Positions 2,226 through 54,375 of a stretch of DNA of 54,491 nucleotides are shown in pieces. Both the position numbers and the translations under genes were made by a program. Origin of the DNA: Saccostrea cucullata (Eukaryota); contig NW_026933053.1 in NCBI RefSeq assembly GCF_032062105.1, positions 1 through 54,491 of the forward strand. Direction: 5' to 3'. Under the pieces are notes generated by a model. It saw only the letters and a program-made list of their open reading frames with translations, did no database searches and was not told the DNA's origin. Within the stretch, counting starts at the first letter, position 1, and the number at the start of each line of letters is the position of its first letter.

Positions 2226-5200
2226 TATTCACTAATTACAGGGACTACTGTTATAACAAATACTCAAAACTGTACTTAAGTACCATTGTTTTCCATTAAG
2301 ATTCTGTGCTAATTTTAGAGTGAGTCAGAGAAGTCCTCTGTGTCGACTGGAACAGAATGGAATGCTGGGATACCAAAGACAGTGTCCACAACTGAGACGG
2401 CAGCTGTTTATCATGTGTAGAGACTGTATGTTAACCAGTAAAGACTGGACCGGTCAAATGGTCACTCAGTAAGTCTTGTGTAGAGACTGTATGTTAACCA
2501 GTAAAGACTGGACCGGTCAAATGGTCACTCAGTAAGTCATGTGTAGAGACTGTATGTTAACCAGTAAAGACTGGACCGGTCAAATGGTCACTCAGTAAGT
2601 CATGTGTAGAGACTGTATGTTAACCAGTAAAGACTGGACCGGTCAAATGGTCACTCAGTAAGTCACATCAGATCACCTGTAGAGACTGTATGTTAACCAG
2701 TAAAGACTGGACCGGTCAAATGGTCACTCAGTAAGTCATGTGTAGAGACTGTATGTTAACCAGTAAAGACTGGACCGGTCAAATGGTCACTCAGTAAGTC
2801 ATGTGTAGAGACTGTATGTTAACCAGTAAAGACTGGACCGGTCAAATGGTAACTCAGTAAGTCATGTGTAGAGACTGTATGTTAACCAGTAAAGACTGGA
2901 CCGGTCAAATGGTCACTCAGTAAGTCATGTGTAGAGACTGTATGTTAACCAGTAAAGACTGGACCGGTCAAATGGTCACTCAGTAAGTCACATCAGATCA
3001 CCTGTAGAGACTGTATGTTAATCAGTAAAGACTGGACCGGTCAAATGGTCACTCAGTAAGTCTTGTGTAGAGACTGTATGTTAACCAGTAAAGACTGGAC
3101 CGGTCAAATGGTCACTCAGTAAGTCATGTGTAGAGACTGTATGTTAACCAGTAAAGACTGGACCGGTCAAATGGTCACTCAGTAAGTCTTGTGTAGAGAC
3201 TGTATGTTAACCAGTAAAGACTGGACCGGTCAAATGGTCACTCAGTAAGTCATGTGTAGAGACTGTATGTTAACCAGTAAAGACTGGACCGGTCAAATGG
3301 TCACTCAGTAAGTCATGTGTAGAGACTGTATGTTAAACAGTAAAGACTGGACCGGTCAAATGGTCACTCAGTAAGTCACATCAGATCACCTGTAGAGACT
3401 GTATGTTAACCAGTAAAGACTGGACCGGTCAAATGGTCACTCAGTAAGTCTTGTGTAGAGACTAACTATATTAACAACATTTTACAGACACACTTTACCA
3501 GCTGACTCTATAATATATTATGATTACATTTTACAGACACCCTTTATCACCTGGCTCTCTATTGTAATTACATTTTACAGACACCCTTTATCACCTGGCT
3601 TTATATTGTGATTATATTTTACAGACACCCTTTACCAGCTGATCACTCCATTAATTTCCTGGCCCACATTCCTTTAGAGGAGTACGGACCCTGTTTGCAG
3701 GTTGAGGGAGACAGCTCTGGGACCCTGTCGCGCCTGGAGGAGGTGACAGATGGTTTCTCTATATCAGCCATCAAGGTGTGTAGAAGTTTAGACACAAAAA
3801 ACTAACGGGATTTTTCTAAATTAAACCTAAATACTACTCTACCAAGGGCAAGAAGTACCAAAACAAAACATATAGTCATTTATGTAGGGTCAGTTTAGTA
3901 CAACGTTAAAGTGCCAAGTTATTTCAAAAGCCAGTTAATGAGTTTACACATTAAAGGGGGGAGCGTCTCGTTGAACTTTCACATGGTTTGGCTAACGTCA
4001 GTAAAAAGGAGATTAAGAAATACAAAACAAAAATACAAAACAAGAAATGCTCAAGAATACTGTAAACCAACTTTTATTCGCGACGACTTTATTTCGCGAT
4101 TTACCGGGAGTAAACTAGTTCGCGACGATAAATTTTCGCGATCAGGTCATTTTGGAACTGTTTTTAATAGTTTAAGAGACTTTAAGGACCCTTTCGCGGC
4201 GAGAAATATTCGCGATGATGAGGCTCTCGCGAAACTCGCGAAAATTTCTCGCACGCGAATAAAAGTTGGTTTACAGTAATAAGACGTGGCACCAAGACTA
4301 TAAACTGAGAACTAAGTCAAAATTTTGATTTAAATCTGTTCTCAGTTTATGGTCTTGGGGCCTGATAGGTGAATGCAGGTTTACTGTTCAAGCTTAATGC
4401 TTTGTTCCAAGATGTATAGTCTACTTGTTTTGTTGGTGTTTTACAATTTCAACATTCCTCTATTCATGACAGGGAATTAATCATGTCTGTAGGCTGCAGT
4501 ACTCGGAGTTCTGTAGATGTGTCGTTCTACGTGTACTTCAGGCTGTAGGTAGGTCTACACACTTCATCAGGTTATGAATATTTATAGTCCATCAAAGCTG
4601 CACATCATTTCATTTATCTCAGTTTTATAACATCAAAAAATATAAATGTATGGACCAAAAGCCATTGAATGTAATATTTATGATGGGGGTTACTTGTACT
4701 TGAAAAAATTCAGATTCACCAAGTAGCAGTGTTGCCCCAGAAACAGGAGGGATTCTTGAGAAAGTCTGGGGATGGATCAAAGAATTGGAGACCCTTCACA
4801 GTTACTACAGCAGTGTTACAAGTCTGTCAGACACGCTACCTCAAAAATCAGACCTCAGTCAAATGAATGACCTTGACATAGCAGTGCACAGCCTTGACCT
4901 TCATTTACAGTCAGCCTTACTGACGTATTTTTGTATGCATGTCAGGTATTTATACACTGGTGTGATTACATGTATGTTTTTTCTGGTTCAATATTGCTTA
5001 ATCCCCCCCCCCCCAAGTAAATGAAATAAAATAATGATGAGAAACTACATCAATCTCCAGAAACTCTGTTGACAAAATTTAAAGCAAATTAAATTATTTT
5101 GTAATTTTTTTTTGTTTGACACCTCAGGGTCAGGAAACTGTCAGTCCTTTTAAAGCATTCAGCCAATCAGAATACAGAGATTAAACAAGACAACCAATCA

Positions 5201-5845
5201 CAGGAGGTCGTCTGGGATCAAATCAAACAGGAACTACTGGCTTGCAAAGGATGCTGGGAAGAAGGATTGGAACGACTCAACAAGTTGTACAAAAACCAGC
5301 CACGCCAGGGTATGTACTGTACAAAAGATGTCAGAGGTTCTTGTACATGATTTTCCCTTTCAAATTAATACTTTGTGCATACATAAGATTGTCTCTTTAT
5401 ACATTGTTTTGTTGACTAGCAGAAAAGACAGAAGAGGTTCCCCCTCAGACAGAGAATACTGAGACCCCCAACCCTGTCCCCCCAGAGGACCTGTTTAACA
5501 CCAGTCCCCCAATCATAGAGGACGAGGTAAAAATGACAGGGAGAAAAGGGCAGTATTTTTAGCTCAGGAAAAAGCGGTACTTTATGAAAATTGTGTGACT
5601 CTCCATTTCAACTGAATTGCTTCAAAGTTCATAGATCACACATTTATATTAGGGAGTACAGATAGCTGCAGAACTGTAGTGTAAGTTATGGTTTTATATT
5701 AGTCTTTGACTATAATGCCACAGGTCATGTAATGCAAATTAAGTGCAATTTATGGCCTAAGATTTTCTCCATACCTTTGCAGAGAATTTGTCCACTTCCC
5801 AGCTTTGGTCAATAAAGTAATTTTCACTTCTCAATTCTAGACATA

Positions 5846-5892
<47 letters not shown>

Positions 5893-7977
5893 ATTTTGTC
5901 CATCGTCCGTCGTGTCTGTCTAGTCCGTCTGTCCATCTGTAAACTTTTCACATTTTCACAACAAAGCCATGATTGATCATATTTATATTGAAGCATTGTC
6001 AGGTAGTGTAGATTCAAGTTTGTTCAAATCATGACCCCCAGGGGTAGGGCAGGGCCACAATGGCCGACCAAAGTTTTACATAGAAATATATAGGAAAATT
6101 CTTTAAAGATCTTCTCAAGAATAACAAAGCCATAATTGATCATATTTATATGGAAGCATCCTCAGGTAATATAGATTCAAGTTTGTTCAAATCATGACCC
6201 CCAGGGGTAGGGCAGGGCCACAATGGCTGACCAAAGTTTTACATAGAAATATATTTATAGGAAAATTCTTTAAAAATCTTCTTCTCAAGAATAACAAAGC
6301 CATGATTGATCATATTTATATGGAAGCATCCTCAGGTAGTGTAGATTCAAGTTTATTCAAATCATGACCCCCGGGGGTAGGGCGGGGCCACAATGGCCAA
6401 TCAAAGTTTTACATAGACATATATAGGAAAATTCTTTAAAAATCATCTTCTCAAGAATAGCAAAGCCCTTGCTCATAGGACTACTTTTGGATTTAAACTT
6501 TTCTATAATGAACCAGATTCTACTTTTTCCTAGCCACAGTGCTCAGATGAGCGATGTGACCCATGGGCCTCTTGTTCTTAATGTCTTTCATATAAAACGG
6601 TCAAATTTAATTTCACTGATACTATCTTACTGATATTGTCTTCTTGATTCTGTGAAAATTTCATTAATTTTTAAATATTAGAAATATGAGAAGAATCCTA
6701 CCTTAAGTGCAACTGTATAACACTATCTCTTTTCATTTCACAAAATGATTTTTACAAAAGCATTTGATGTTCGACTGTTTTTGAAAATGAAAATTTATAT
6801 ATCATCCATGATTTAGGTGTTTGAAGCCTACATTGATGAGGAAACGGAAAATGACCCAGATTACAGCTGGGACGAGTATCTCACACCAGAAGAAAAGGTA
6901 GATACATATACCAATATGACTGTGAAATTTATTTAAGTTTATTAACTCGCAGGTTGAAATGATGAATACTGTATACAAGGAAATTTACCCCCCTGTTTTA
7001 TTTTCGCCCCTTTTGCCCTTTCCCTGATTGGGCGAATTTAAAACGGGGCAATTCAAATTACACTTCATAATTTCTTAAACAGAACTATGACTGGGCGAAT
7101 TCAAAATGGGGCAAAATTGTTCACAAGTTCAAAAGGGCGAAAATAACACGGGGCGAAAATAACCCTGTTTTCAGTACCCTGTGCACATGTACTGGTTGCT
7201 GTGTAAAAACTCATTTAGCATCGTGTCATTGTAGGAATGAAATGGTATAAGATGATTATGTTTCAATGAATCGCATCAAGATAATTTTAAAAGAATTAAA
7301 TATTTTAATCATCCTGGATATTTCAGGAAAAGAAGAGGCGAGAGAAACAGGAAGCCCTGCGATTACTGACGGAGCTGAAGTCGGTGATTTCTGTGAGGGC
7401 ACTGGAGATGGGAAGGAGAGAGAAGATAGCCCAGGAGAGGAAGTACGGCCATGCTACCTTGGAGAAAGAGAGTGTAGAGAGGCAAGGTTTGACCACAGAG
7501 GACCAAGAAGTGGGTCAGAAATTATTACAGAGGAGAAATTCTGACAATGATGATCTTCTTGAAAATACAAACTTGGATTTATCCAGTGTTTCTGGGAATG
7601 AAGGTGTTCCTCTGCATGGAGAGCTTTGTCATGAAGAAGATCTGAGTTGTGATGAGTGTAAATTAGCTGTGGAACAGTTAAAAAGTGTGGAGTGTGAAAG
7701 TGATCCAGACAGTAGACTTAACACAGACACTGACATTGATCATCAATGTAAAGACAGGATATTTACCACAGGTTCAGAGGAATCAGTCGATTGTTCTTTA
7801 GGAAGTTTTCGGGACTCTGTGCCAAGGATAGGAGTTTTACCTACACAGAGTCCAGGATTTCAGTTTTCTTCCAGTCTGGCTGCCATGGCGGTCGCTAGGT
7901 CACGTGACTTTGGGCTGACGGAGGACACGTTTGGTGACAGTGAGTCAGAGACAGAGAACCAGGTGAATGAGGACTAG
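839..7977 (+). CDS. VEZT: Vezatin, 3' portion (9 exons in window; 5' exons lie upstream)
   Basis: Exons 839-1132, 2319-2468, 3625-3775, 4473-4548, 4714-4924 (or 4945), 5128-5309, 5420-5526, 6817-6897, 7327-7977 have GT-AG ends and compatible phases. Peptides RLIQESELVARGFTL, TDGFSISAIK, AVHSLDLHL, CWEEG, FEAYIDE, LTELKSVI and SPGFQFSSSLAAMAVARS..EDTFGD match recalled vertebrate vezatin motifs (RLIQETEVISRGFTL, TDGFSLPALK, SPDFTFTAGLAAEVAARS..EQTFGD) in order. Confidence 0.93.
1391..2224 (+). mobile_element. Non-autonomous Helentron/HINE with ~167-bp internal tandem repeats
   Basis: 5' TTAGCTCACCTGAGC..GCTCAAGTGAGC hairpin, GTCC/GTCT microsatellite, three to four ~167-bp units, 3' CAGGTGAGCGATGTGGCCCATGGGCCTCTTGTT, T-rich insertion site. 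Confidence 0.85.
2414..3462 (+). repeat. 63-bp minisatellite made of a vezatin exon 3' end plus 5' splice site (16 GTAAGT donors)
   Basis: Unit TGTGTAGAGACTGTATGTTAACCAGTAAAGACTGGACCGGTCAAATGGTCACTCA|GTAAGTCA. The first copy is exonic; three 73-bp variants are present. Confidence 0.97.
3477..3645 (+). repeat. ~45-50-bp degenerate repeat made of a vezatin 3' splice site plus exon start (4 copies)
   Basis: ATTTTACAG|ACAC(C/A)CTTTA occurs near 3480, 3528, 3572 and at the true acceptor at 3624. Confidence 0.9.
4058..4278. mobile_element. Palindromic MITE
   Basis: Termini TACTGTAAACCAACTTTTATTCGCG and CGCGAATAAAAGTTGGTTTACAGTA; internal TCGCG repeats. Confidence 0.85.
5847..6576 (+). mobile_element. 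Non-autonomous Helentron/HINE with the same termini as 1391-2224
   Basis: Near-identical termini and microsatellite; about three internal ~165-170-bp repeats. Confidence 0.85.
6967..7177. mobile_element. MITE with TACTG...CAGTA ends
   Basis: Imperfect TIRs; internal TTCGCCC and GGGCGAA inverted repeats. Confidence 0.7.
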
Positions 7978-10147
7978 TCCAAACACGTTACATTTACCTG
8001 AATCAGACTTGTATGGTCTGATGACTCCCTGTTTTATTGTTTTAGTACAATTACAGTGAAACTTGTCTAATACAAATTTTGAAAATTCTGTAATCTTGCC
8101 TTAACTTGCCATTACACAGGAAAATTACTCTGAAATTTTGTTCAATATTCTTTCAATGCAAATAATTCAGAAATATTTATGTTAAAATACCCTCTTGAAA
8201 ATGTCCCCAGAAATTTTGCTATAAGAACACTTCGTATACATGTACATCTAAACCTTTTCAAAAATTTTGAGCTGTAAAGTTGCATTTCTTTCGGTTTGGC
8301 CAAACAGTAAGCAGCATAATAACTAACTAAATATCACTTCTAAAATGATAGAGGTAATATATAGTTAAGAAAAGATTTTTGAATTTAGTAAGAAAAAAGT
8401 TTGCGTTAATATGTATCCTTAAGATTTATAAACCCTCTGCTGATGCCCATTCAATGCTTCTTTATAAACTTAGGATTTTCAATAGTAAATGTATATGCTA
8501 AATAAAATAAAAACAATTATAGCATGGCTTGCGGGGCAAATTTTCACAAAATACTGAAATTAGGCACTTCAACTTGGCAAATTTACAAACTTTAAGGAAT
8601 AGTTAACGTTGTTGTAATTAAGAGTAATCTCTCTTTAGTTATCAGAGTATCCATGTACCTCAGACCAGACTATTATTTAATCAAGGTCAGCTGGCCAATT
8701 TCTTTGAACTGGTGGTGTCCAGATAAGGCAAGTTAGAAGAATGTAGAATGTACATTTGGTTGTATAAAATCTTTACTAGTCTTTTTTGGGAATGTGCAAT
8801 AATTGTTGATATATACATTTGTAATCTCATTCTCTTTCAACTTTTTGTTTTTATTTGACATGTAGTACACATATATGATAAAATTATCCACTGCATATTG
8901 AACTGTGGTTTTATTGTTTTGTGAAGTATGTAAATCAATAACAGGCATTTTTGTCACAAAAAATATAAACCCAAACTTAATAAATCATGTGTTTTATTTT
9001 TGTTATATCCCAAACGAGTTGCAGAGCATGTTTTTGCCATGTCTGTCAGTCATTCCTCAGCACATTGGGTCATTATGAGTGGTGGGTGAGAGGTCAGTTT
9101 TGCGGGTGTGACCCACCAAATGTGGGTCACTTGGCAGTTCTGTTCCTGTGATTGTCAGCATAACTCCTCTAAAAGTGACACACAGAGTACATGTATTGTG
9201 AACCTTTCTCTACAGACTATGCCTAGGTTTTAAGTGAAAAGTCTGTGTAATTACAACTGAAAATTCAGAAAGAAGACAGGTTGCTTTATAGTCATTTATT
9301 TTTTTGTAATAAAATACATCACAAAAAAAGTAATTCTGAACTTTACCTCCATGCACTAAAAGATATGAGTGGACTTTAAAATTGGAGGTCCAATAGAATT
9401 CAATACATTTGACACTTAGTTCAAGTTAGTTAGGTATCTACTAATTGTATCAAAAATATGAAATATGTAAATTTAGTGATGCGCACTGTACCTTAAATAT
9501 TTCCACTACTGTTACAGTATAATTTATTACAAAGGTACTTCATTCTAATGTTTTTCTAACAAAAACATTGACCAGAGCACCTGTTCCTGTATTGCTATAC
9601 AAATCCACAACAAGGCACACGGAGATTAAAGTCAATATCAATTAACAAAAACAATAATTAATATAATACGTAAATATACAATATAATAAATATGTGTAGA
9701 GAAAATATCCACTAAGTTCAAATATCACAGCTAAAGAAGAGAATTACAGGTTTAGGACATTAGGATTATTGAACAACAACATCATTAACCAGGCCAGGCT
9801 ACGAGCAGCACAGGAATCCAATCCTGGGGACGACATCAATTCAAAATGATACATGTATCTTGGATTAGACCGATAATTTGGAAAATTCCATGCATTACAC
9901 TTGGGTAAAAAATATGACACTGTGTTCATCATGATGCTTAAGTCTTCCTTGTAATGCTGTTGTCTTGGGAAACTTTTCCTTGGGTATATGTTCCATTCTA
10001 AAAATTCTTAGTACAAATTTCTATATGATAAATGGTGATGATATGAGTATAATGAAGGATGAATTCCCGCCCCCCACTGTCATCAGCTGGATTTTTCGGA
10101 GTCGGCCTTCTCCATGCTTTCGTCCTCCTCCACGACGACGTCTTTTG

Positions 10148-13100
10148 TCACAATTTTCTCGTGTTCTTTAATGACTTCCGTCTCTGTAATTTTTTCCTCG
10201 ATGACCCTCTCCCTATTTTCTCGTCGAGCTCTGGGAAGGTCCCGCGGAACGTGCTGCTGGCGATCTCCTGTAACTCCTCTAACTGTTTCTGTTGATTGTT
10301 GTCCACGCGATCCAGTCGCTGTCTCAGAAGGCGAAGGTCCTCCTGGTGTTTTCTCTCCTAAAATGTAATGTTTAAACCATTAACATTACGACATTCATTT
10401 CTTAGAAAATCAAGGTACTGTGAAATCACTTATTTTGTGTGTGATTAATATTCTTGTTTTACAGGCATTGAGAGACCCACGAATTGATGACATCACAAAT
10501 TTCACATGCATTTCTACAAAATTTTCTTCAACTATGAAATCAAGTCCCTAAACAACTTTTTTTTCATCAAACCTGGAAATTAATGTGATTATACAGAATA
10601 ACAAGGCACTGGTGAAACATTATACACTTATTTAATGACTACGAGGTAAACAGTCAAAATGTTGTCCCGAGGTAGTGGGGGAGACCTGGGAAACTGTTGC
10701 CTGAGGCCGAGGGCAACAGTTTCCCAGGTCTTCCCCGCTACCGAGAGACAATAGTTTGACTGTTTCACAGAGTAGTTATTAAATACTTAGTAAGTGTTTT
10801 ATTACCTAACCTACTATATAATTAACTAAATTGGAATAAAAACACACAAACAATCAATAAAAAAGTTTTCACAACTGTTTATTCACATACTTGTCTATTA
10901 ATTAGCTGAACACATAATATAAAGTTTCAATTAATATTTTTAATTTAAAGTAATACTTAATAAATTGATTGTTTGTGTGTTTTATTTATATTTGATTAAT
11001 TATAGAGCAGGTAAATAGTGATGTCGTGATCATCAAATTGCTTGAATATCACGATGACGCTTTAAACAGTCAACAGTTCATTCTGTGGCCCGGTCAACAG
11101 TTCACTGTTTCATGATCACGCAAAAAACATAAAGTAAACCGTGAAACAGTTCAAAATGCCTAATTATAATTTATATAGTAGGTTAGGTAATAAAACTTAC
11201 TGAACACTCAGATAACAAAAATTTGAAAACAGTTACTTTTACTCAGGGTCTAATAACAATTGAAAAGGAAATGTGTATTTGAGATTTTCAAAACAAAACG
11301 TAGGAACATACTAAGATACGACATTAAAAGCCCAAAAGAATACAACATAACAGACAAATACAGCTGAGAAAAGTTAGAACAGGATTAATCAATGATATTG
11401 TGTTCTAAACATCATAATTAATGATACTACTGTGTCCAAAGATGAATATGTATATCTACTGATTGATGGTTACAAGTAGTGTTGGCAACGAGTACCCGGT
11501 TAACCGGTTAACCGTCGAACGATGCGAGTATCGGTTAGTAAAACTGCTATTCGGTTACTCGGATAAAAATACATTTTTCATATTAAATACGTATAAAATA
11601 ATTTTTATGTTATTTGTAAATGTATATTGACACATTTTCCTTATTTAATTACCGTTAGGCTTGCTCTAGTGGTTCACAAATAGGATCGATTTGTTTTGAT
11701 TAGTTTAATTGATGGCTTTAATTGCCAGGGGTACGCGTTTTGAAAACCTGAGTTATAATTACCTGATTTAAACTGACCTGTGTTAGAGGTACATACTTTA
11801 TCAAGATGCCGCCTCAAACATCGAGAGCGTGGAAATATTGTTAAACAACTCGAAATCTGTCAAATTCAAATCATGTGAATCAGAGTTGTCTTATAAGGAT
11901 GCTATATTATTTAATTTAGATTGAAACAATTATTTCGATAACCAGCGACTTGCAGGAGACGCCAAACTCCCCGTTTCAAGTGACATTAAAAATCAAAATT
12001 CTTCGAAGATATTGTGTGGGTTTTTTAAAGTCTGTATTTGTAAATAAAGTTAATATATCTTATATTTGTTGTTTGTTTCTATCAATAAGTAAAAGGATGA
12101 AATTAATAATAAATACGAAAACTACAACATAAAATCATCCGAGTAACCGGGTACTCGATCGGAAGATTAAGCGAGTAACCGGTTAATAAAAATCGTCCGA
12201 TTTGCCAACACTAGTTACAAGCAATTTACGAGTAATTTTATCTGTATGCTTTGTAATGATATATGTTCCTTTTATTGTTTCTATTGTTATACTTTGTGAC
12301 AATTGATTAATCTTGGTTCTAAAGTTTATACACAGTATGCAGAAAATTCAAAGCTTTTCCAGATACACCAACAACACCTTCATGCAGAGAGTTGACATTT
12401 TTTTAAAATAAAAATTGACACAAGAACTTTAAAGAAATGATAAAACGGGAATAAGCCTTAATTTTCTGAGTAGAGCCGTAATTTATACATTATACTAGTA
12501 CCTCTACCTATGATGTTGTCACATAAAACTAATGCTGAAAGAAGGGGAGATAATCATAAAAAGTATGTAAATAATGATACTACACTACAGCTAAGTCATT
12601 CTACAGATACATGTAACTAATTAAGAAATTTCCCTATAAACTGTAAGATTAAGTCTGGTACAGTTAACAACAAGTACAGTAATACAAGAAGTGTAAAGTA
12701 ACATCCTCTGATCATGCTAGTGAGGAATTTTTTTACAAAACATTAAGATAAATTTTTACTTTATTCAGTAACCCTATACATGTATGTATTACCTGTTCTG
12801 TAAAACTGACGTTTCCTGGTAAAAATGTACAATCCACTGGTACGGTGACATTAGCGAAGGACATATCTCCAATGGTGACCGGGAACACGCTGGACAGCAG
12901 GACTTTACGGAACTCGTTATGTCGCCTGTGGAGGTCCTTCCATTGCTTCTTAAGTTTGCTGTAAATATCCTGAGGAACGCAGGCTCTGAAAGGTCAACAT
13001 TGACATTAGTCTAGGTATACAGAAAATCTATTCCCGTACCAAACATTCTAACAAATGCTCATGAGCAGCTCATGAGACTCACATGAGAATCAAGTAAGAA

Positions 13101-16100
13101 TTGTATGCAAATTAGGTAGAATTGGATTTTGCTCATGTGCAGATTGTTAGTCTTTGTTAGGGAGGAAAATACTAACCAAAATGCACATGTGCAAAATTAT
13201 GCTCACCTCAATGCTCATGAGCAAAAGTCTATTCAATTTGCTCACCTAAGAACAGCCTAATTTAAGATATAGCATTGGTAGTGATTTTTCTAAGTTCAAT
13301 TTTCTCACGTGAGCAAGAGGTGAGCAAGAGGTGAGGAAATTGGACATAGTCAAAATTCAGTATTACAAGTAGAACCAAAACCAAAGATTTAGAAGTCTCA
13401 ATTCCTCACGTGAGGCTCACGTGAGGAAATACAATACTCTGACACTCTATGTGGTCCAAGCTTTTCCAAGACTTTATTACAAATTGACCATGTGTTAAGT
13501 GTTAACACTTCCTGCTGATAGCATCACAAATGATTGGGGACCAGGCAGGAATATCTTAATTTCTTGAGCTTCTAATCTTTATCTCCCATCAATTTGAAAA
13601 TGCTTTCCTCTACTTAAACAACCTGTTGTGTCCCCCACTGTTACTTAAGGTGGGGCAGTATCCAATGAGGAGAGCCAGTTAGGATTTGTGCGCCTTCTAA
13701 GACCAGTTCAAAATTTCAATACAAAATGTGAGGGACATTGAAAGTATATGGATTAATACAGTGAAGGACTGAAATATGCTTTTGGAAATACATGTCATAA
13801 CAATATTGAACTAGATGCCAACCTTTAAGAGTTACAAATGTATCCAGTATGTCCATGGGATGAGGAAATGATTAAAGATCAATTAGACATTACCATGCTG
13901 GTGCAGCCACAATGAAGGAAAATTTCAAAGATTTGCTGATCTGAGAATAGGGTAAGTGCTTTGAAATTTATTATCCCCCCTCTCATTTCAGATATTACTA
14001 ATTTAAAAAAAATATGTATAAATGTTAATTATCAGCTAGTGTATTTAAGTTTGATACATTTAATGCAGAATATGTTATCAGGCATTTAACAGTTTAATTA
14101 AGAACTATAAATATGGTAAGAACAGATTATATTAGGTCAGAGTGTACAATTGACAGCCTCAGTGTGGTATTCCATGAATTACAAGTATTTAAGTTGCCAA
14201 TTAAATATTGATGCATACCCGGTATGATTTTTCTATTGCATGACTGGCTTTTCATCATCATGACAAACGGATCGAACCTTGAAAATATACTAACTTATTA
14301 TAACTTCAAATTTTTTGCAGATAAAAGTTGGAATCAAAGGATCTGCAGATTAATCAGGGACCCTAGCTGTCTGTGTGTGTAGTAGCTCAGAGCTTGCATA
14401 CATGATGGAGTTCTGATGTTGGCACTCATTTAAAGGAAATGCAAGGAAAAAGAATGGAACAGGATGAATTGATTATGATTCTATGACCACTGGATTATTA
14501 TTTTAAACCCAAGTATGACTGCCATTCATAAATTCAGCAAAGGCAAAAACATCTACTTAGCCTCCAAGACAACTTAAAACCATCTAGCACTAGTGCAGTC
14601 AAAAATGTTGACTGGACATTAACATTGGATGTTCTATCTTAATCTACTGGAAATGGAACTATTGGATAATAATTCTTTGATTGATGTGTACTGTACATAA
14701 TTATAATAATTCAATTTAAATTTTAATTTCATTTTAAGTTTAAAAGATGAAGTTCACTGAACATAATTATGCATGCATCTATTTACATGTACATGTTGCT
14801 CAAGAGTATTTAAAATGTAATTGATGAATCACATTTTAGAATTACATAATTATATAATGTTTGTAATCTGAATTTTGTTATTGTTGCTTGTTCCAAGTGA
14901 GCAATTGTTGCACATGAGTCTCATGAGCCTCATGAGACTCATGTGAGCAATATTCTAGGTGAGCAAAATGATTCCTCACGTGAGCAAAAAATGCTAATGT
15001 GCAGAACCCTGCTCACGTGAGCATTTCACCTCATTTGCATGTTAAATTGCACATGAGACTCACGTGAGCAACTCAGGTGAGGAAATCTGGTTAGTCCTCA
15101 CGTGAGCTGCTCATGAGCAAATTGTGAGAATAGTTTGGTATGGGTTACCTACAGCACTGGCTTTTGAATGAATGATTTGTTTATGATCAAGTTTAACATC
15201 TGTACAACATCTATTATTCTGACAAAGTCATATTTAGCTCTTAATAAGCCTTATACTCATTTTCTGTGAAAAAGGTTCATTCTCTATAAGGCCATTTTCC
15301 GGCCTACGATAAAATCACTTTAAAATGTGATTTTATATAACTTTAATCATTCTAGTTCATGATTTTGATGTTTGGTTTTCAACATCGATCATCTAAGTCA
15401 CGTGATTTCGAGATAAAAAATGGCTGTCAGTTAAAGAAAAATTGAGGGTAGGTCTATTTAAATCAAGTTTCTATGCATGTTTCTGAATGTAAATGATCAA
15501 AAATTGTTTATTTATGTCGGAAATACATCAGACCTAAGTAATAAATTCGAAGATTTTTTAAATTTAAGGTTTAAGATATTTTTTTTTGACAAGAATTCTA
15601 ATGCATCCATATTTTGCATATTTTGAACGTAAATCTTTACGAAATTCACACTGTAAGGTGCTGAAAAAAGTTTGATTTGAAATTTATTGAAGAGTATTAC
15701 ATCATATATTATTATATTGTAATTGTACATCATTTCTATAGATGTGGTACTTATTTTAAGCATAAAATAACCATGTTAGAAATGAGGTTTCTTATTTTCT
15801 ATTGAACTCTAAAAGTTATGTATCAAATGTTAAAAGCACTGAATGGATTTGATTGTGATTAAATAAAACTGAAGTAGTAATTAAGAAAAGAAATTCAACA
15901 ATTGCAAAAAAATTAAGAATTAACAGCATAAGAATATCAATGAAAGTACATGTTGACTATCCATATACATGTAAATAGTCAATACATACAACTCAGAGCG
16001 GTTGCATTAAAATATACATCTCTGAGTAAAATGAAATAGCGTTGTAAAATGGCTTTGCTTTTATTCAATTACTCGTGCTGCACGATATATTCAATCAAAA

Positions 16101-39760: not shown

Positions 39761-39791
<31 letters not shown>

Positions 39792-40219: not shown

Positions 40220-40598
40220 ACTGGATTACACAGTTTTCTCAGGGTTTTGGGGTGGTTTTTTTTTTTTTTTTTTTTTGAGCGACGAGGTCACCCCTGGTCA
40301 CTTACAACACGACCCAGGATCTTTATCTGGTCACTGTGTTTACACGTGATAAAACAATGACCCACAATCAGTTACGTCTGTAGACAATATATATATATAA
40401 TAAATAATTGCTTTAATTGTACAAAAACATTAAAGATGACATGTTATTGGGGAAATTAGGAAAGAAAGTCAATTGACCCACTCTCTTCAACTTCCCACCC
40501 ATTTGTTACATTATTTTGAAATTTTAGATCTAAAGTTTAAACTTATCTGTAACTATAGATAAGTTTAAAGTTAAGAATTAAACTTTTAACGTAGCACA

Positions 40599-41327: not shown

Positions 41328-41339
41328 TTAGGCGCCTTA

Positions 41340-41920: not shown

Positions 41921-41923
41921 ATA

Positions 41924-42872: not shown

Positions 42873-45800
42873 ATGGGACAACGTCATAGTAAATTGGCTC
42901 CGAAAACTTTAGCCGAGCTGAGAGATCAGACGAACTTCACTGTGGAGGAACTTAATGAGTGGTATAAAGAATTCAGAAGTAGCTGGCCGAAAGGAGCCCT
43001 GACAGTGGACGAGTTTAAGAAGGCCTACTCCACTTTCTTCCCGCTAGGGGACGCCTCGGAGTTCGCCAAACACGTGTTCCGGGTTTTTGATCAGAATGAT
43101 GATGGTTTGCTGGACTTCCGGGAATTCGTCTGCGGGTTTAGTGTCGTCCTGAGAGGAAGTGTTGACGACAAACTGTCCTTCAGTTTCCAAATCTACGACA
43201 TTAACGGCAACGGATTTATCACCAGAGACGAAATGAAGGAGGTGCTTTCTGTACGTATAAAGATTTAGCTAAAATTTGAACTTCGTTGCATCTTGGTCTT
43301 TGCAGCATATTTGAAATTTTACCGCGAGATAGTAGATCATGCATGCAGTTGTATCGTGGGCCTTTTATTACGCTTTAAAGTTTTTTTTTTGTACTTTAGT
43401 TCATAAATTATAAATTTTCACGACATTAACTTTATAATTAACAATGTAAACATCTAAATCCTTCAAGAAAGAATAGGGGCACGCGAATAAGCCGAAAATA
43501 TCAATGCTGAAAATACGTCAATGAATAAAAGAGAGCAAACCATTCAATTAGAAATACTTAGAAATCAACGAAATACTTCATTTATTATTGAAACAATATG
43601 CTACAGTTTCAGTAGCCTTGAAAGTATTTACTAATAGAATAGCATGTGCCCAATGAAATTTCTCTGTAATTTAGGCGATATACAAGATGGAGAGCGCGCT
43701 GTCACCTGACGTGTGTGTAGTATTATAATAGTAAATCTACCTTTCTCTGTAATTTAGGCGCGCTGTCATCTGACGTGTATCTAGTTTTATAATAGTAAAT
43801 CTACCTTTCTCTGTAATTTAGGCGCGCTGTCAGCTGACCTGTATGTAGTATTATAATAGTAAATCTACCTTTCTCTTGAATTTAGGCGCGCTGTCACCTG
43901 ACGTGTTTCTAGTATTATAATTGTTAATCTACCTTTCTCTGTAATTTAGGCGCGCTGTAACCTGACGAATTTCTAGTATTATAATTGTAAATCTACCTTT
44001 CTCTGTAATTTAGGCGCGCTGTAACCTGACTTATTTCTAGTATTATAATTGCAAATGTACCTTTCTCTGTAATTCAGGCGCACTGTCAGCTGAGGTGTAT
44101 GTAGTATTATAATAGTAAATCTACCTTTCTCTGTAATTTACGCGCACTGTCAGCTGACGTGTATGTAGTATTATAATAGTAAATCTACCTTTCTCTGTAA
44201 TTTAGGCGCACTGTCAGCTGACGTGTATGTAGTATTATAATAGTAAATCTACCTTTCTCTGTAATTTAGGCGTACTGTCAGCTGACGTGTATGTAGTATT
44301 ATAATAGTAAATCTACCTTTCTCTGTAATTTAGGCGCGCTGTCACCTGACGTGTATGTAGCATTATAATAGTAAATCTACCTTTCTCTGTAATTTAGGCG
44401 CGCTGTCACCTGACGTGTTTCTAGTATTATGATAGTAAATCTGCCTTTCTCTGTTTGATGCGCGCTGTCACCTGACGTGTATCTAGTATTATAATAATAA
44501 ATCTACCTTTCTCTGTAATTTAGGCGCACTGTCAGCTGATGTGTATGTAGTATTATAATAGTAAATCTACCTTTCTCTGTAATTTAGGCGCACTGTCAGC
44601 TGACGTGTATGTAGTATTATAATAGTAAATCTACCTTTCTCTGTAATTTAAGCGCGCTGTAACCTGACGTGTATGTAGTATTATAATAGTAAATCTGCCT
44701 TTCTCTGTAATTTAGGAGCGCTGTCACCTGACGTGTTTCTAGTTTTATTGTAGTAAATCTACCTTTCTCTGTAATTTAGGCGAGCTAGCTATCAGCTAAC
44801 GTGTATCTAGTATTATAATAGTAAATCTGCCTTTCTCTGTAATTTAGGCGCGCTGTCACCTGACGTGTTTCTAGTTTTATTATAGTAAATCTACCTTTCT
44901 CTGCAATTTAGGCGAGCTAGCTGTCAGCTAACGTGTATCTAGTATTATAATAGTAAATCTGCCTTTCTCTGTAATTTAGGCGCGCTGTCACCTGACGTGT
45001 TTCTAGTTTTATTATAATAAATCTACCTTTCTCTGTAATTTAGGCGAGTTAGCTGTCAGCTAACGTGTATCTAGTATTATAATAGTAAATCTACCTTTCT
45101 GTGTTATTTAGGCGCGCTGTCACCTAACGTATTTCTAGTATTGTAATCGTAAATCTACCTTTCTCTGTAATTTAGGAGCGCTGTCACCTGACGTGTTTCT
45201 AGTTTTATTATAGTAAATCTACCTTTCTCTGTAATTTAGGCGAGCTAGCTGTCAGCTAACGTGTATCTAGTATTATAATAGTAAATCTACTTTTCTTTTT
45301 TATTTAGGCGCGCTGTCACCTAACGTATTTCTAGTATTATAATCGTAAATCTACCTTTCTCTGTAATTTAGGCGCGCTGTAACCTGACGTATTTCTAGTA
45401 TTATAATTGTAAATCTACCTTTCTCTGTGATTTAGGCGCGCTGTAACCTGACGTATTTCTAGTATTATAATTGTAAATCTACCTTTCTCTGTAATTTAGG
45501 CGTGCTGTCACCTGACGTGTATCTAGTATTATAATAGTAAATCTACCTTTCTCTGTAATTTAGGCGCACTGTCAGCTGACGTGTATCTAAAATTATAATA
45601 GTAAGTCTACCTTTCTCTGTAATTCAGGCGTGCTGTAACCTGACGTATTTCTAGTATTATGATTGTAAATCTACCTTTCTCTGTAATTTAGGCGCGCTGT
45701 CATCTGACGTGTATCTAGTTTTATAATAGTAAATCTACCTTTCTCTGTAATTTAGGCGCGCTGTCATCTGACCTGTATCTAGTATTATAATAGTAAATCT

Positions 45801-46655
45801 ACCTTTCTCTTGAATTTAGGCGCGCTGTCACCTGACGTGTTTCTAGTATTATGATTGTTAATCTACCTTTCTTCGTAATTTAGGCGCGCTGTAATTTAGG
45901 CGCGCTGTAACCTGACGAATTTCTAGTATTATAATTGTAAATCTACCTTTCTCTGTAATTCAGGCGCACTGTCAGCTGAGGTGTGTGTAGTATTATAATA
46001 GTAAATCTACATTTCTCTGTAATTTACGCGCACTGTCAGCTAACGTGTATGTAGTATTATAATAGTAAATCTACCTTTCTCTGTAATTTAGGCGCACTGT
46101 CAGCTGACGTGTATGTAGTATTATAATAGTAAATCTACCTTTCTCTGTAATTTAGGCGTACTGTCAGCTGACGTGTATGTAGTATTATAATAGTAAATCT
46201 ACCTTTCTCTGTAATTTAGGCGCGCTGTCAGCTGACGTGTATGTAGCATTATAATAGTAAATCTACCTTTCTCTGTAATTTAGGCGCGCTGTCACCTGAC
46301 GTGTTTCTAGCATTATAATAGTAAATCTGCCTTTCTGTGTAATTCAGGCGCGCTGTCAGCTGACGTGTATGTAGTATTATAATAGTAAATCTACCTTTCT
46401 CTGTAATTTAGGCGCGCTGTCAGCTGACGTGTTTCTAGTATTATAATAGTAAATCTGCCTTTCTCTGTAATTTAGGCGATGTACAAGGTGGAATGCGCGC
46501 TGTCAGCTGACCCCACGAGAGACGACCCGGAAGAGAGAACCGACGCCATCTTTAATCAGATGGACATTAATTGTGATGACAACTTGTCCCTGGAAGAATT
46601 CGTACAGGGGATCAAAAAGGACCCCCACATCCTTAAAATACTGGAAATCCAGTGA
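42873..46655 (+). CDS. Neuronal calcium sensor family protein (neurocalcin/hippocalcin-like), 2 exons, about 185 aa
   Basis: Exons 42873-43250 and 46476-46655. MGQRHSKL myristoylation motif; EF-hand loops DQNDDGLLDFREF, DINGNGFITRDEM, DINCDDNLSLEEF; family motifs FFPLGDASEFAKHVFRVFD and KKDPHIL. Confidence 0.93.
43658..46512 (+). repeat. 64-bp minisatellite made of the NCS 3' splice site plus exon start (about 43 acceptors)
   Basis: Unit TTTCTCTGTAATTTAG|GCGCGCTGTCA(C/G)CTGACGTGTATGTAGTATTATAATAGTAAATCTACC; the last copy is the true acceptor at 46475. Confidence 0.97.
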
Positions 46656-47674: not shown

Positions 47675-50600
47675 TCACTTCCGGTCCCCTAGAATCTCGT
47701 GCACGTGACTCGGGTGGCGACACACGACGACGGGTACGTGGGCATGGTGGACAAGATAATCACTGACAGTTCCGATCAGGGTCCGCCGGACCTTGCCCAT
47801 CCCACGACAGCCGCAGATGATGACGTCAGCATTCTCTCGCTCCGCAGTGGACACCACGAATTCACCTGGTTTACCTACCCCTGTTTTAACTGAGCCGGTT
47901 AACTGAAAAAAGAATTTTAAAAATCAGTTAATAATTCTAATCTTTATTGTGAAAATAAGGCGTCGTAAAAATTGTGACATTCAATTTCAACATACACCAT
48001 TATATGATCAGACTCTGTATTTCTTTGTTGTGATATAATTCTTGTTGAATATCACTGTGCGTCTTTTAAAATGATCACTACTATCTACTACAGTGCTAGA
48101 ACAACATTTTCAGTTTTGTTGTGTGATAATGGATGTAGGTATCAATGTAATCATTATCTTTTGATCCTAGTGTACCTTATTCTGTGAATATGTATTAAAA
48201 TTTACACACAGTATAATTAAGTTATAATGTATACTGTATTCTGTGTATACCTTATTCTGTGTGTACCTTATTTTGTGTATACCTTATTCTGTGTGTACCT
48301 TATTCTGTGTGTACCTTATTCTGTGTATACCTTTTTATGTGTATACCTTATTCTGTGTATACAATTAAATTCTTAATTAAAAACTTGGATTGTAACTGTG
48401 TGTATCCTATATTCAGAACACATTTATATACCTTTTAAAATTCTGTGTGTACATTAAAGCATTGTGAAGTTCTGTACAGTACATCAGGAGATTCTGTGTG
48501 TACCTTATTAGACAAAAGCACTGTGTACCATATATCTGTGTGTCACAGCTTTTTTCTGTGTTTATCTCCATATTGGAAAAGGACTGTGTGTACCTTTTAC
48601 TGTGTACCATTATTCTGTGTGTACCGGATTTTGTAAACCTTATTCTGTGTACCCAATATTCTGTGTACCACTTTCAGGCTGTGTGTTCCTACATACTTTA
48701 CATGTGTATAGCTTATTCTGTGTATACCTTATTCTGTATATGTCTTTTAAAATGACCTTATCTACTACAGTGTACAACATTTTCAGTTTTGTTGTGTATG
48801 GATGTATAGGTATCAATGTACATTATCTTTTATTCTGTGTACCTTATTCTGTGTGTACACTTAGTATAACTTATAATGTATACTGTATTCTGTGTATAGC
48901 TTGTTCTGTGTGTACCTTTTTCTGTGTGTACCTTATTCTGTGTGTATACTGTATACCTTATTCTGTGTGTACCTTATTCTGTGTACCTTATTCTGTGTAT
49001 ACCTTATTCTGTGTTTACCTTATTTTGTGTATACCTTATTCTGTGTGTACCTTATTCTGTGTGTACCTTATTCTGTGTATACCTTATTCTGTGTACCTTA
49101 TTCTGTGTATACCTTATTCTGTGTATACCTTATTCTGTGTACCTATATACTGTGTGTATAGCTTGTTCTGTGTATACCTTATTCTGTGTTTACCTTATTT
49201 TGTTTGTACCTTATTCTGTTTGTAACTTTTTTTGCGTACCTTATTCTGTGTATCTTATTCTGTGTTTACCTTATTCTGTGTACCTTATTCTGTGTGTACC
49301 TTATTCTGTGTATACCTTATTCTGTGTATACCTTATTCTGTATGTACCTTATTCTGTGTATACATTATTCTGTGTGTACCTTATTCTTTGTACCATATTC
49401 TTTGTATAGCTTGTTCTGTGTATACCTTTTTCTGTGTGTACCTTATTCTGTGTATACCTTATTCTGTGTGTACCTTATTCTGTGTACCTTATTCTGTGTA
49501 TACCTTATTCTGTGTTTACCTTATTTTGTGTATACCTTATTCTGTGTTTACCTTATTTTGTGTATACCTTATTCTGTGTGTACCTTATTCTGGGTATACC
49601 TTAACTGTGTGTACATTAATTATTCTGTGTATACCTTATTCTGTGTACCTTATTCTGTGTGTACCTTATTCTCGTGTGTACCTTATTCTGTGTACCTATA
49701 TATATTTGTGTGTACCTTATTCTTTGTACCTTATTCTTTGTACTAAATAGCTTGTTCTGTGTATAATTCTGCGTGTCTTAATTTGTGTGTAATTCTGTGT
49801 GTATATTATGCGTACCTTATTTGTGTATCTTATTCTGTGTTTACCTTATTCTGTGTACCTTATTCTGTGTGTACCTTATTCTGTGTATACCTTATTCTGT
49901 GTATACCTTATTCTGTGTGTACCTTATTCTGTGTATAGCTTATTCTGTGTTTATCCTGCAACTACCCCTTGCATTGACCTAATAAAGGTAACCTAATAAA
50001 CCAACTACTGCCCTATAAAGTCTCGTGCATGTATTCAGACGTTCTAAAAGCATTGTGACGTCATGTATATTGCAATGTTTACGCCATGGCGTCACAAATT
50101 TTGCAGAGTTGTGCATAATTTGTCGGAAATAGCTAGTTTTACGTTCAAATGTAAATGTGCAGGATAAACATACAGTGACTGTCTAAGAAATACAAGCGAT
50201 ATTTTCTACACGCGGATTCAACAGAAATTGAGATTCCGCCCTATATCACGTTTTCTTACCCTCGCCCAAATATCGCTTATAAAGACAGTAACCACAGTAT
50301 TTAATATATACCTTATTCTGTGTGTACCTTATTCTGTGTGAACCTTAATCTGTATGTACCTTATTCTATGTATATATACTTTATTCTATATGTACCCTAA
50401 TCTGTATGTACCTTATTCTGTGTATACCTTATTCTGTGTATACTTTATTCTGTGTGTACCCTAATCTGTATGTACCTTATTCTGTGTGTACCTTAATCTG
50501 TGTATACCTTATTCTGTGTACCTTATTCTGTGTATACCTTATTCTGTGTATACCTTATTCTGTGTGTACTGTATTATTCTGTGTACCTTATTCTGTGTAT

Positions 50601-53600
50601 ACCTTATTCTGTGTGTACCCTAATATGTATGTACCTTATTCTGTGTATACCTTAGTCTATGTGTACCTGTCTGTGTATACATGTAGTCAAACCTGTTTTA
50701 AGAGTCCACTCATGGGAGAATGACAAATTGGCCACATAAGACAGATGGCCTCTTATTCCAGGTTTCAAACCAATGAATAAAAAATTGCCACCTAAGTTGT
50801 ATATTTATTTTCATATATATACAAATCCACAATTTCAACACATTTAAAAAAATTGGAAGTTTTAAGTCACATGCAATCCCTTTTCTTACATTTCATTTTA
50901 CATGAATTTCTGAAGGAAATATGTTACTGGTTTTTTTTTGTTTTGTGTTTGTAATTTTAACAGCCTTAGAATTAACATCACACTAAATCATGAAATGTTC
51001 AAATGAATTAGCATTTCTCTGATGCTGTGTAAACCGCTTTGTAGTTTTTCTAGATAACATAATATGCTATAGTGCAAGACTGACTGCTTGACTTGATAAC
51101 CTCAGACAAAATTGTAATTAATGTATTGAGTTAAATATCATGAACATATATTAAAATATGCAACAACTTACTTTCATATATATAAAAAAACACCCAAAAC
51201 ATTTGTTTACAATAAATCATTCACTTATATTAATTAAATCATTTAATCCTGACAGAATTCAAATTACAACCCCAATTATTGGTAATTACTCATTATCAGC
51301 TGTTCATGTTTGGCTTCTCTGAGGATACGAGGTCACGTGCCAGACGGAAGTCATGTGACCAAACAGACAAAATAGCCACTGAAAACAGGCATGTTGAGCG
51401 CACGGGGCCTAAAAACACTGGCAACTGGCCGCGTTAGACAGGTGGCCACTTAAATGAGTTAAAATACAGTGAAAAAATGAACGGGCAGGATCGAAACTGG
51501 CCGCACATGGAGAGTGGCAGGTTGATTAAGGGTGGCCGTAACCTTATTCTGTGTATACCTTATTCTGTATGTACCTTATTCTGCGTATATCTTATTTTGT
51601 GTACCTTATTCTGTGTATACCTTATTCTGGGTGTACCCTAATCTGTATGTACCTTATTCTTTGTATAGCTTATTCTGTGTATACCTTATTCTGTGTTAGT
51701 ACCTTATTCTGTGTACCTTATTGTGTGTACCTTATTGTTTGTATACATTATTCTGTGTGTACCTTATTCTGTGTATCTTATTCTGTGTATACCTTATTCT
51801 GTGTGTACCTTATTCTGTGTACCTTACTCTGCGTACCTTATTCTGTGTATTTTATTCTGTGTTTACCTTATTCTGTGAATACCTTATTCTGTGTGTACCT
51901 TATTCTTTGTACCTTATTCTGTGTATGGCTTATTCTGTGTATACCTTATTCTGTGTATACCTTATTCTGTGTACCTTATTCTGTGTATAGCTTATTCTGT
52001 ATGTACCTTATTTATTTTGTGTGTACCTTAATCTGTGTGTACCTTATTCTGTGTGCCTGATTTCTGAAAAATGAATAAACCTATTTATGTTTAAAAAATT
52101 CTGTGTATACCTTATTCTGTGTTTACCTTACTTCTGTGTACACTTACTCTGTGTACCTTATTCTGTGTTTACCTTATTCTGTGAATACCGTATTCTTTGT
52201 ACCTTATTCTGTGTATACCTTGTTTGTGTGTACCTAATTCTGTGTACCTTATTCTGTGTATAGCTTATTCTGTGTGTACCTTATTTTGTTTATACCTTAT
52301 TCTTTGTATACTTAATTCTGCATGTATCCTAATCTGTATGTACCTTATTCTGTGTATAGCTTATTCTGTTTGTACCTTATTTATTCTGTGTGTAATCTGT
52401 GTGCACCTTATTCTGTGTGTATTCTGTGTACCTTATTCTGTGTATAGCTTATTCTGTGTGTACCTAAATCTGTGTATACCTGTTATTTTGTGTACCTTAT
52501 TGTGTGTAAAGCTTATTCTGTGTATACCTTATTCTGTATACCTTATTCTGTGTGAACCCTTGTTTGTGTATACCTATCTGTGTGTACCTTATTCTGTGTA
52601 TACCTTATTCTGCGTATACCTTATTTTGTGTACCTTATTCTGTGTACCTTATTCTGTGTGTAATTTATTCTGTGTGTACCTTATTTTGTGTGCCTTATTC
52701 TGTGTACCTTATTCTGTGTGTACCTTATTCTGTGTACCTTATTCTGTGTGTACCTTATTCTAACTGTACCTTAATCTGTGTACCTTATTCTGTGTGTACC
52801 TTATTCTGTGTACCTTATTCTATGTGTACTTTATTCTGTGTACCTTATTCTATGTGTACCTTATTCTGTGTGTACCTTATTCTGTGTACCTTATGCTGTG
52901 TGTACCTTATTCTGTGTACCTAATTCTGTGTACCTTATTCTGTGTACCTTATTCTGTATGTACCTTAATCTGTGTATCTTATTCTGAGTACTTTATCCTG
53001 TGTGTACCTTATCCTGTGTGTACCTTATTCTGTGTACCTTATTCTGTATGTACCTTATTCTGTGTATCTTATTCTGTATATACCTTATTCTGTGTATCTT
53101 ATTCTGTGTACTTTATCCTGTGTGTACCTTATCCTGTGTGTACCTTATTCTGTGTGTACCTTATTCTGTGTGTACCTTATTCTGTGTACCTTATTCTGTG
53201 TGTACCTTATTCTGTGTACTTTATTCTGTGTGTACCTTATCTGTGTGTACCTAATTCTGTGTACCTTATCCTGTGTGTACCTTATTCTGTGTGTACCTTA
53301 TTCTGTGTAAACCTTATTCTGTATGTACCTTATTCTGTGTATACATTATTCTGTGTGTACCGTATTCTGTGTGTACCGTATTCTGTGTACCTTATTCTGT
53401 GTACCTTATTCTTTGTACCTTATTTTGTGTACCTTATTCTGTGTATACCTTATTCTGTGTGTACCTTATCTGTGTGTATCTTATCCTGTGTGTACCTTAT
53501 TCTGTGTATACCTTATTCTGTGTGTACCTTATTCTGTGTACCTTATTCTGTGTGTACTTTATTCTGTGTACCTAATTCTGTGTGTACCTTATTCTGTGTA

Positions 53601-54375
53601 CCTTATTCTGTGTGTACCTTATTCTGTGTACCTTATTCTGTGTATACCTTATTGTGCGTGTGTACCTTATTCTTTGTACCTTATTCTTTGTACCATATTC
53701 TTTGTATAGCTTGTTCTGTGTATACCTTATTCTGTGTGTACCTTATTCTGTGTATACCTTATTCTGTGTGTACCTAATTCTGTGTACCTTATTCTGTGTA
53801 TACCTTATTGTGTGAGTGTACCTTATTCTTTGTACCTTATTCTTTGTACCATATTCTTTGTATAGCTTGTTCTGTGTATACCTTATTCTGTGTGTACATT
53901 ATTCTGTGTGTACCTTATTCTGTGTACCTTATTGTGTGTGTGTACCTTATTGTGCGTGTGTACCTTATTCTTTGTACCTTATTCTTTGTACCATATTCTT
54001 TGTATAGCTTGTTCTGTGTATACCTTATTCTGTGTATACCTTATTCTGTGTACCTTATTCTGTGTACCTTATTCTGTGTGTACCTAATTCTGTGTGTACC
54101 TTATTCCGTGTTTACCTTATTCTGTGTATACCTTATTCTGTGTATGTACGTTACCTTATTGTGCGTGTACCTTATTATGTGTGTGTGCCAGTTTTTTCTT
54201 AAGAATAATCTCCTCTATATTTTTTTCACTATGTACCTTATTTTTTGTAACCTTTATTCTCAGTGTACCTTATTCTCCGTTAGTTTTTGTTCTAGCTGTT
54301 TCTGTAGACTTTTCTCTTCTTTCTCCTCTCTATCCAGTATATCACAAACCGTTTTCACATCAGACATACCCAAAG
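47675..54375 (-). CDS. Universal stress protein paralogue 2, last two exons (5' exons lie beyond the window)
   Basis: Exon 54375-54269 is 107 nt, the same length and phase as exon 3 of paralogue 1 (LGMSDVKTVCDIL..KLTENK). Exon 47902-47675 encodes GKPGEFVV..GCRGMGKVRRTLIGTVSDYLVHHAHVPV. Confidence 0.9.
48170..54277 (-). repeat. 16-18-bp satellite made of the USP2 exon end plus donor, filling most of a 6.4-kb intron
   Basis: Plus-strand ACCTTATTCTGTGT(GT/AT) equals minus-strand AGAATAAG|GTACAC, identical to the true junction GAGAATAAG|GTACAC at 54269/54268. Confidence 0.95.
50684..51540. mobile_element. Tc1/mariner/pogo-like non-autonomous element inside the satellite, one end truncated
   Basis: Starts TAGTCAAACCTGT; TGGCC and GACAGGTGGCC subterminal repeats at both ends; runs directly into satellite without a second TIR. 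Confidence 0.55.

What the first reader, a model, noticed from the sequence alone, without database searches (positions are those of the whole stretch)
2414..54277. Window-wide pattern: tandem arrays are seeded from exon-intron junctions and consist of decoy splice sites
Seen: about 10 of roughly 75 junctions, in all six unrelated genes, have their own junction sequence amplified into the intron. Donor arrays occur at 2414, 18100, 18890, 19596, 22820, 29180, 38280 and 48170-54277; acceptor arrays at 3477 and 43658. The units share no sequence with each other (16-70 bp, 2 to roughly 250 copies by estimate), so this is a recurring process rather than a repeat family. All four arrays of 1 kb or more are of this kind. 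Inference: a splicing- or transcription-coupled mutational mechanism (pausing, R-loops or breaks at junctions), or selection for decoy sites that tune splicing. It resembles the tandem-duplication model of intron gain, but here no new intron results.
Basis: partly seen in the sequence, partly recalled or inferred. Interest (0 to 1): 0.9.

Follow-up and report, generated by a model that had tools for sequence, protein, structure and literature searches.

The report
Exon-edge minisatellites in rock oyster genes
In this rock oyster about one exon edge in eight has been copied head-to-tail into the neighbouring intron, up to about 250 times; this is far more than chance, the genes checked still splice normally, and it points to a mutation bias near exons rather than to a splicing-control device.

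Summary
The window is a Saccostrea cucullata contig with six genes and 78 junctions. A junction-blind scan finds 20 tandem events: 10 span a junction, 6 are transposon-internal, 4 are neither. Expected by position: 1.4-1.9 of 14 (P about 1e-7). In other oyster sequences the excess is smaller (5 of 13 against 1.3; P about 0.005). It fades if only intron ends count as targets. The three large-array units searched are locus-specific. A second copy of the region keeps the one-copy allele of the 53-copy array, with a 7-nt microhomology one period apart. RNA reads confirm five CEP83 introns and show no clear decoy use. Two arrays in relatives span stop codons, and large non-junction arrays exist, so the rule looks like 'edge of coding DNA', not splice sites alone. 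Best reading: microhomology-seeded duplication biased to exons and their flanks, a survival filter, then VNTR growth. Selected decoys are not supported. Closest precedent: the human F7 intron-7 VNTR. About 12% of junctions in Saccostrea against 2% in other molluscs sampled is not described in papers I could search. The scan noted the same pattern on other contigs (unchecked).

The parts
191..7978 (+). vezatin-like gene, 3' part, 11 exons (first exon uncertain)
   Evidence: orthologous S. echinata gene carries PF12632; model
2411..3465 (+). donor array, 63-bp unit (57 exon + 6 intron; 73-bp variant), about 16 copies; junction 2468|2469
   Evidence: absent from C13300, similar 59-bp array in S. 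echinata
3477..3641 (+). acceptor array, 44 bp x 3.6; junction 3624|3625
   Evidence: also in C13300 and S. echinata
10086..27388 (-). CEP83 gene, 11 exons
   Evidence: RefSeq protein mapped exactly; five introns seen in RNA reads laid on the C13300 copy
18112..18521 (-). donor array, 46 bp (39 exon + 7 intron) x 9; junction 18481|18480
   Evidence: 16 copies in C13300; absent in S. echinata
18900..19133 (-). decayed donor array, about 35 bp x 5; junction 19110|19109
   Evidence: 36 bp x 3.4 in S. echinata; first donor used in RNA
19273..19380 (-). 39-bp array ending 13 nt before an acceptor; does not span it
   Evidence: shared with S. echinata
19599..21461 (-). donor array, 35 bp (26 exon + 9 intron) x 53; junction 21436|21435
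   Evidence: one-copy allele with 7-nt microhomology in C13300; junction seen in RNA
22823..22999 (-). 104-bp duplication (66 exon + 38 intron); junction 22929|22928
   Evidence: 19 reads at the first donor, 8 ambiguous reads at the copy
29067..36842 (+). Roc-domain gene, 14 exons
   Evidence: PF08477 in orthologues; model
29180..29477 (+). decayed array at a GC donor, about 63 bp; junction 29208|29209
   Evidence: absent in S. echinata, which has a GT donor
37333..40222 (-). universal stress protein gene 1, 4 exons
   Evidence: PF00582 in orthologues; model
38270..38456 (-). decayed donor array, 73-87 bp x about 2.5; junction 38417|38416
   Evidence: better kept in S. echinata, absent in C. 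virginica
42867..46655 (+). hippocalcin-like (NCS) gene, 2 coding exons
   Evidence: RefSeq protein mapped exactly
43655..46478 (+). acceptor array, 64 bp x 43; junction 46475|46476
   Evidence: start also on C21910; absent in S. echinata, C. virginica, Magallana
47680..54375 (-). universal stress protein gene 2, last two exons
   Evidence: PF00582 in orthologues
48160..54277 (-). donor array, 16 bp (8 exon + 8 intron), about 200-270 copies, two inserts; junction 54269|54268
   Evidence: only here and on C15521; also in S. echinata, absent in C. virginica

Best explanation
These are locus-specific minisatellites (VNTRs) born at the edges of coding exons. Step 1 (footprint shown, mechanism inferred): a 16-104 bp stretch is duplicated in tandem between short direct microhomologies, one in the exon and one in the intron, as in replication slippage or flap and end-joining errors. 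Step 2 (inferred): such duplications arise more often in and beside exons than in intron interiors; exons here are 47% GC against 32% outside. Step 3 (inferred, partly shown): selection filters them. Copies wholly inside an exon mostly break the frame; copies that cross a donor, acceptor or stop codon leave the first donor, last acceptor or first stop intact and are tolerated. Step 4 (shown by allele differences): two copies then expand or collapse, from 1 to 53 copies between 98% identical copies of the region. The extra splice sites are mostly silent passengers.
For: Enrichment in the window and out of sample (5 of 13 against 1.3; further cases on predicted exons). Microhomologies of 7 and 9 nt exactly one period apart in unamplified alleles, against 0.5% and 0.1% of background offsets. 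Presence/absence and copy-number differences. RNA uses the authentic sites. Arrays span stop codons in Magallana Roc and S. echinata vezatin, and in-frame exonic duplications occur. Donor-to-acceptor ratio 8:2 is in the direction the filter predicts (P 0.11). First-donor preference among identical copies is shown for F7 (PMC1557585).
Against: The cause of the bias was not measured. Three other seeds have only 2-4 nt of microhomology. Several intron-only duplications hug acceptors within 30 nt, which suggests position rather than exon sequence matters. Two units (16-mer, 64-mer) are only 36-38% GC. The excess weakens to non-significance if only intron ends are counted. Nearly all data come from one syntenic region.
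Confidence: 0.55

Rival explanations
1. Splicing- or transcription-coupled mutagenesis: polymerase pausing, R-loops or breaks focused at junctions in the germ line seed the duplications.
For: Excess at junctions; intron-only duplications clustered just upstream of acceptors; both splice sites of one vezatin intron affected.
Against: Stop-codon-spanning arrays at a roughly similar per-site rate (2-3 among about 30 stops viewed); large non-junction arrays; only 4 of 167 junctions in other molluscs, mostly CEP83. No direct evidence of R-loops or breaks.
Confidence: 0.2
2. Survivorship only: duplications arise evenly, but intron interiors are replaced quickly by transposons and deletions, while exon-anchored arrays persist and stay recognisable.
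For: The excess drops to P 0.004 and 0.11 with introns capped at 200 and 100 bp; only about 5 of 19 kb of intron aligns to S. echinata at a strict threshold; six arrays are shared with S. echinata, so they are old.
Against: Very young arrays (35 x 53, 75 x 2.7, 32 x 16) are also junction-spanning; removing transposon inserts leaves P 5e-7.
Confidence: 0.17
3. Selection keeps arrays of decoy splice sites to tune splicing or expression.
For: Most copies in young arrays keep GT or AG (53 of 53, 40 of 42); some human repeats alter splicing (PMC10078293); six arrays persist across two Saccostrea species.
Against: Arrays are dispensable between alleles and species; old copies lose the donor; GT in the 16-mer varies 10-17% against a 13% mean; no unambiguous decoy joint in RNA.
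Confidence: 0.05
4. Assembly artefact.
For: The 35 x 53 array was seen in one contig only; raw DNA reads were not checked.
Against: The same arrays lie on separate contigs and in an independent S. echinata assembly; copies carry patterned variants.
Confidence: 0.02

Closest known systems
Human F7 intron-7 37-bp VNTR (PMC1557585)
   Same: The first unit spans the exon-intron boundary; five to nine identical donors; only the most upstream is used; copy number is polymorphic.
   Different: A single human locus; here about 12% of junctions, up to hundreds of copies, and acceptor arrays too.
Internal tandem repeats at exon-intron boundaries in human segmental duplications (De Grassi and Ciccarelli, PMC2812944)
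   Same: Variable minisatellites at exon-intron boundaries as a recurring class (27 intron modifications).
   Different: There they can form novel introns or alternative transcripts in young paralogues; here CEP83 exon sizes are conserved across molluscs and no new intron appears.
Tandem repeats enriched towards intron ends in plants and green algae (Zhao et al., PMC3887541)
   Same: Positional excess of repeats near junctions.
   Different: The passages read concern short motifs inside introns, not units made of the gene's own exon edge.
Tandem-duplication model of intron gain (Rogers 1989, cited in PMC2812944; details from memory)
   Same: A short tandem duplication containing a splice-like motif.
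   Different: It needs a duplicated exonic AGGT to make a new intron; here an existing junction is copied and the intron only grows.
Transposon-internal satellites of oysters (150-170 bp arrays; Helitron-like assignment from memory)
   Same: Tandem arrays in the same introns.
   Different: Dispersed multi-copy units unrelated to host exons; junction units are locus-specific.

Membership tests
Junction-spanning VNTR (F7 IVS7 type) | Terminal unit spans the authentic exon-intron boundary | tested here: met
   10 arrays; RNA support for three of them in CEP83
Junction-spanning VNTR (F7 IVS7 type) | Copy number varies between alleles | tested here: met
   1 vs 53 and 9 vs 16 copies; C13300 may be an allele or a duplicate, since a third copy exists
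Junction-spanning VNTR (F7 IVS7 type) | Only the authentic site is used; copies are silent | tested here: inconclusive
   Authentic sites dominate; 8 reads at the 104-bp copy are mapping-ambiguous; RNA animals are 1-10% diverged and not genotyped; acceptor arrays not tested
Junction-spanning VNTR (F7 IVS7 type) | Copies become active when the first site is disabled | not testable with these tools
   needs minigene assays
Dispersed or transposon-borne satellite family | Unit found at many unrelated loci | tested here: not met
   35-, 16- and 64-bp units only at their own locus or second assembly copy
Intron gain by tandem duplication | A new intron absent from relatives | tested here: not met
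   CEP83 internal exon sizes and the NCS structure match relatives
Splicing-regulatory tandem repeat (spl-TR) | Repeat length associated with splicing level | not testable with these tools
   needs matched genotype and RNA

The most novel reading that the evidence does not exclude
Saccostrea has a germ-line mutational process tied to splicing or co-transcriptional events that seeds tandem duplications at junctions of many genes, making exon edges the main birthplace of its non-transposon minisatellites and a notable source of intron growth (22% of this window).
Probability: 0.2. Interest if true: 0.85.

Novelty: new variant of a known kind. Interest (0 to 1): 0.58.

Why it matters
Junction-spanning VNTRs are known as scattered cases. 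Here they affect about one junction in eight in one oyster genus and fill 11.8 kb of a 54.5-kb window. Captured one-copy alleles make minisatellite birth visible. A genome-wide set would allow direct tests of two open questions: whether mutation is focused on exons or junctions, and how the spliceosome chooses among dozens of near-identical donors or acceptors. It also matters for annotation and read mapping, since exon-edge copies create false exons and ambiguous joints.

Tried and rejected
The 150-kb arbitrary sample was gene-poor: one clear acceptor array on a predicted exon among many transposon-like or AT-rich arrays, too little for a rate. Two first versions of my detector were faulty and were replaced. 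Column-conservation results for the 46-mer and the S. echinata 32-mer were out of register and are not used. I first classed the 41924 array as transposon-internal; one search showed it is locus-specific, and it was recounted as a non-junction event. The joint at the second donor of the 104-bp duplication was rejected as proof of decoy use: the copy differs from the exon end at one base in 66, and no read had more than 64 bases on that side. The reads call avoided the long arrays, so the 53-, 43- and 250-copy arrays were not tested in RNA, and no raw DNA reads were laid. Spliced models were never searched as joined proteins; exons were searched by reference and joined only locally to check frames. 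Nine paper searches found no report of this pattern in oysters; the library is partial.

Full report
Source and genes. The window is a whole contig of a 1.17-Gb assembly. RefSeq proteins on a contig of this exact length name it as Saccostrea cucullata. It holds vezatin, CEP83, a Roc-domain gene, two USP genes and a hippocalcin-like gene, in the same order as in S. echinata; the Roc-USP-NCS-USP part also matches C. virginica and Magallana. CEP83 and the NCS gene were mapped exactly from their proteins. The others were modelled by hand and checked for frame and for matches in relatives. Total: 78 junctions.

Observation. A detector that scores local duplication without knowing junctions, with no false calls at its threshold in simulated sequence, found 20 tandem events once fragments were merged. 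Ten span a junction: eight donors and two acceptors. Six lie in dispersed elements. Four are locus-specific but do not span a junction; one of these ends 13 nt from an acceptor. Junction units hold 8-66 nt of exon. The 35-, 16- and 64-bp units occur nowhere else except second assembly copies of the same locus. Junction arrays make up 11.8 kb, 22% of the window.

Chance. With arrays collapsed to one unit and seeds placed anywhere not wholly inside an exon, 1.4 of 14 should span a junction; 10 do (P 3e-8; 5e-7 after removing transposon inserts). Counting transposon arrays as well gives 10 of 20 against 2.9 (P 1e-4). The result depends on how intron interiors are treated: capping introns at 400, 200 and 100 bp gives P 1e-4, 0.004 and 0.11. 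Because the window was chosen for the pattern, I tested events not shared with it in C13300, S. echinata and C. virginica: 5 of 13 against 1.3 (P 0.005; events classified by hand). The unbiased excess is therefore nearer four-fold than seven-fold. Two more clear cases lie on predicted exons outside the window's genes: a 94-bp donor array in C13300 and a 64-bp acceptor array in the arbitrary sample.

Distribution. Junction arrays: window 10 of 78; S. echinata about 7 of 62; C. virginica 2 of 25; Magallana 0 of 26; Mytilus 0 of 20; Pecten 1 of 20; Tegillarca 0 of 10; Ruditapes 0 of 22; Mya 0 of 22; Haliotis 1 of 22. Three of the four non-Saccostrea cases include only 1-4 exon bases. These samples are one gene or one region per species. 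Other first-stage notes report the pattern on further contigs of this genome; I did not check them.

Dynamics. C13300 is 98% identical over CEP83 and has no 35-bp array: the exon end and intron start share ACTGACC exactly 35 bases apart. It has 16 rather than 9 copies of the 46-mer, lacks the 63-bp array, and has its own 75-bp donor array. The window keeps the one-copy state of a 32-bp x 16 S. echinata array, with a 9-nt match 32 bases apart. Matches of 7 and 9 nt occur at 0.5% and 0.1% of background offsets. Other seeds show only 2-4 nt. Six arrays have counterparts in S. echinata, so some are old; five window arrays are missing there.

RNA. Raw reads from three runs labelled as the same species, laid on C13300, show all five CEP83 introns in the stretch with GT-AG ends at the modelled sites. 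Depth is near zero over the decayed 35-bp array, and depth at the start of the 46-bp array matches exon-only coverage. Eight reads join the second copy of the 104-bp duplication against 19 at the first, but the copy is almost identical to the exon end, so they cannot be assigned. The reads are 90-99% like the reference, so those animals may not carry the same arrays.

Mechanism. The footprints fit microhomology-seeded tandem duplication followed by ordinary VNTR expansion and collapse. Survival is explained by geometry: the first donor or last acceptor stays next to an intact exon, and first-donor preference among identical copies is shown for F7 (PMC1557585). A filter alone does not explain the excess over intron interiors, so a mutation bias, or faster loss of interiors, is needed. 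Two observations favour a bias to coding DNA over a splicing-specific cause: arrays spanning stop codons in Magallana Roc (46 bp x 5-6) and S. echinata vezatin (24 bp x 2), absent from the relatives compared, and in-frame duplications inside the vezatin last exon. Exons are 47% GC against 32%. Links to GC content, methylation or nucleosomes are inference from general knowledge and were not tested. Duplications that hug acceptors without entering the exon keep a junction-linked cause open. Selected decoys are unlikely, for the reasons given under rivals. Large arrays are not confined to junctions: a 27-bp x 155 array fills an S. echinata Roc intron and an intergenic 19-mer spans at least 1.8 kb on C21910.

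Known and new. Single loci (F7), a class of human boundary repeats (PMC2812944) and repeat excess near intron ends in plants (PMC3887541) are described. I found no report of exon-edge minisatellites at about a tenth of junctions in an animal genus, within a partial library. Verdict: a real feature, a new variant of a known kind, cause of the bias unresolved; interest 0.58.

Noticed in passing
window 43675-43710: The first copy of the NCS acceptor array keeps a full 36-nt exon start followed by GT, a possible mini-exon; internal units have lost 18 nt of it. RefSeq uses the last acceptor.
   Followed up: partly
L028 3213-3496; L027 4513-4750; L023 20687-20733: Tandem arrays spanning stop codons (Magallana Roc gene, S. 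echinata vezatin); possibly also an 84-bp duplication on C13300 near 40240.
   Followed up: partly
window 41924-42013; C21910 3291-5099: An intergenic 19-bp array has about 5 copies here but spans at least 1.8 kb on the second contig.
   Followed up: partly
window 10086-10357: The CEP83 last exon is 2 nt longer than in C13300 and S. echinata, shifting the frame (748 vs 769 aa); an allele or an assembly indel.
   Followed up: no
window 35796-36842: These two exons fall inside the Roc gene range in S. echinata, C. virginica and Magallana and join the Roc frame in my model, so they are probably its 3' end.
   Followed up: partly
window 29208 and 30257: Two GC-AG introns in the Roc gene; the first is GT in S. 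echinata.
   Followed up: partly
C13300, C21505: Part of the Roc gene exists in three assembly copies (100, 99, 96%), and C13300 is only about 87% identical over vezatin but 98% over CEP83; it may be a duplicate or a mosaic haplotype.
   Followed up: no
L023 12-4202; window 31583-31885: A 27-bp x 155 intron-internal array in S. echinata Roc has a short decayed counterpart in the window.
   Followed up: no
window 13020-17620, 25479-26646: Insertions absent from C13300 whose tested parts are multi-copy at 93-99% identity: recent transposon insertions in CEP83 introns.
   Followed up: partly
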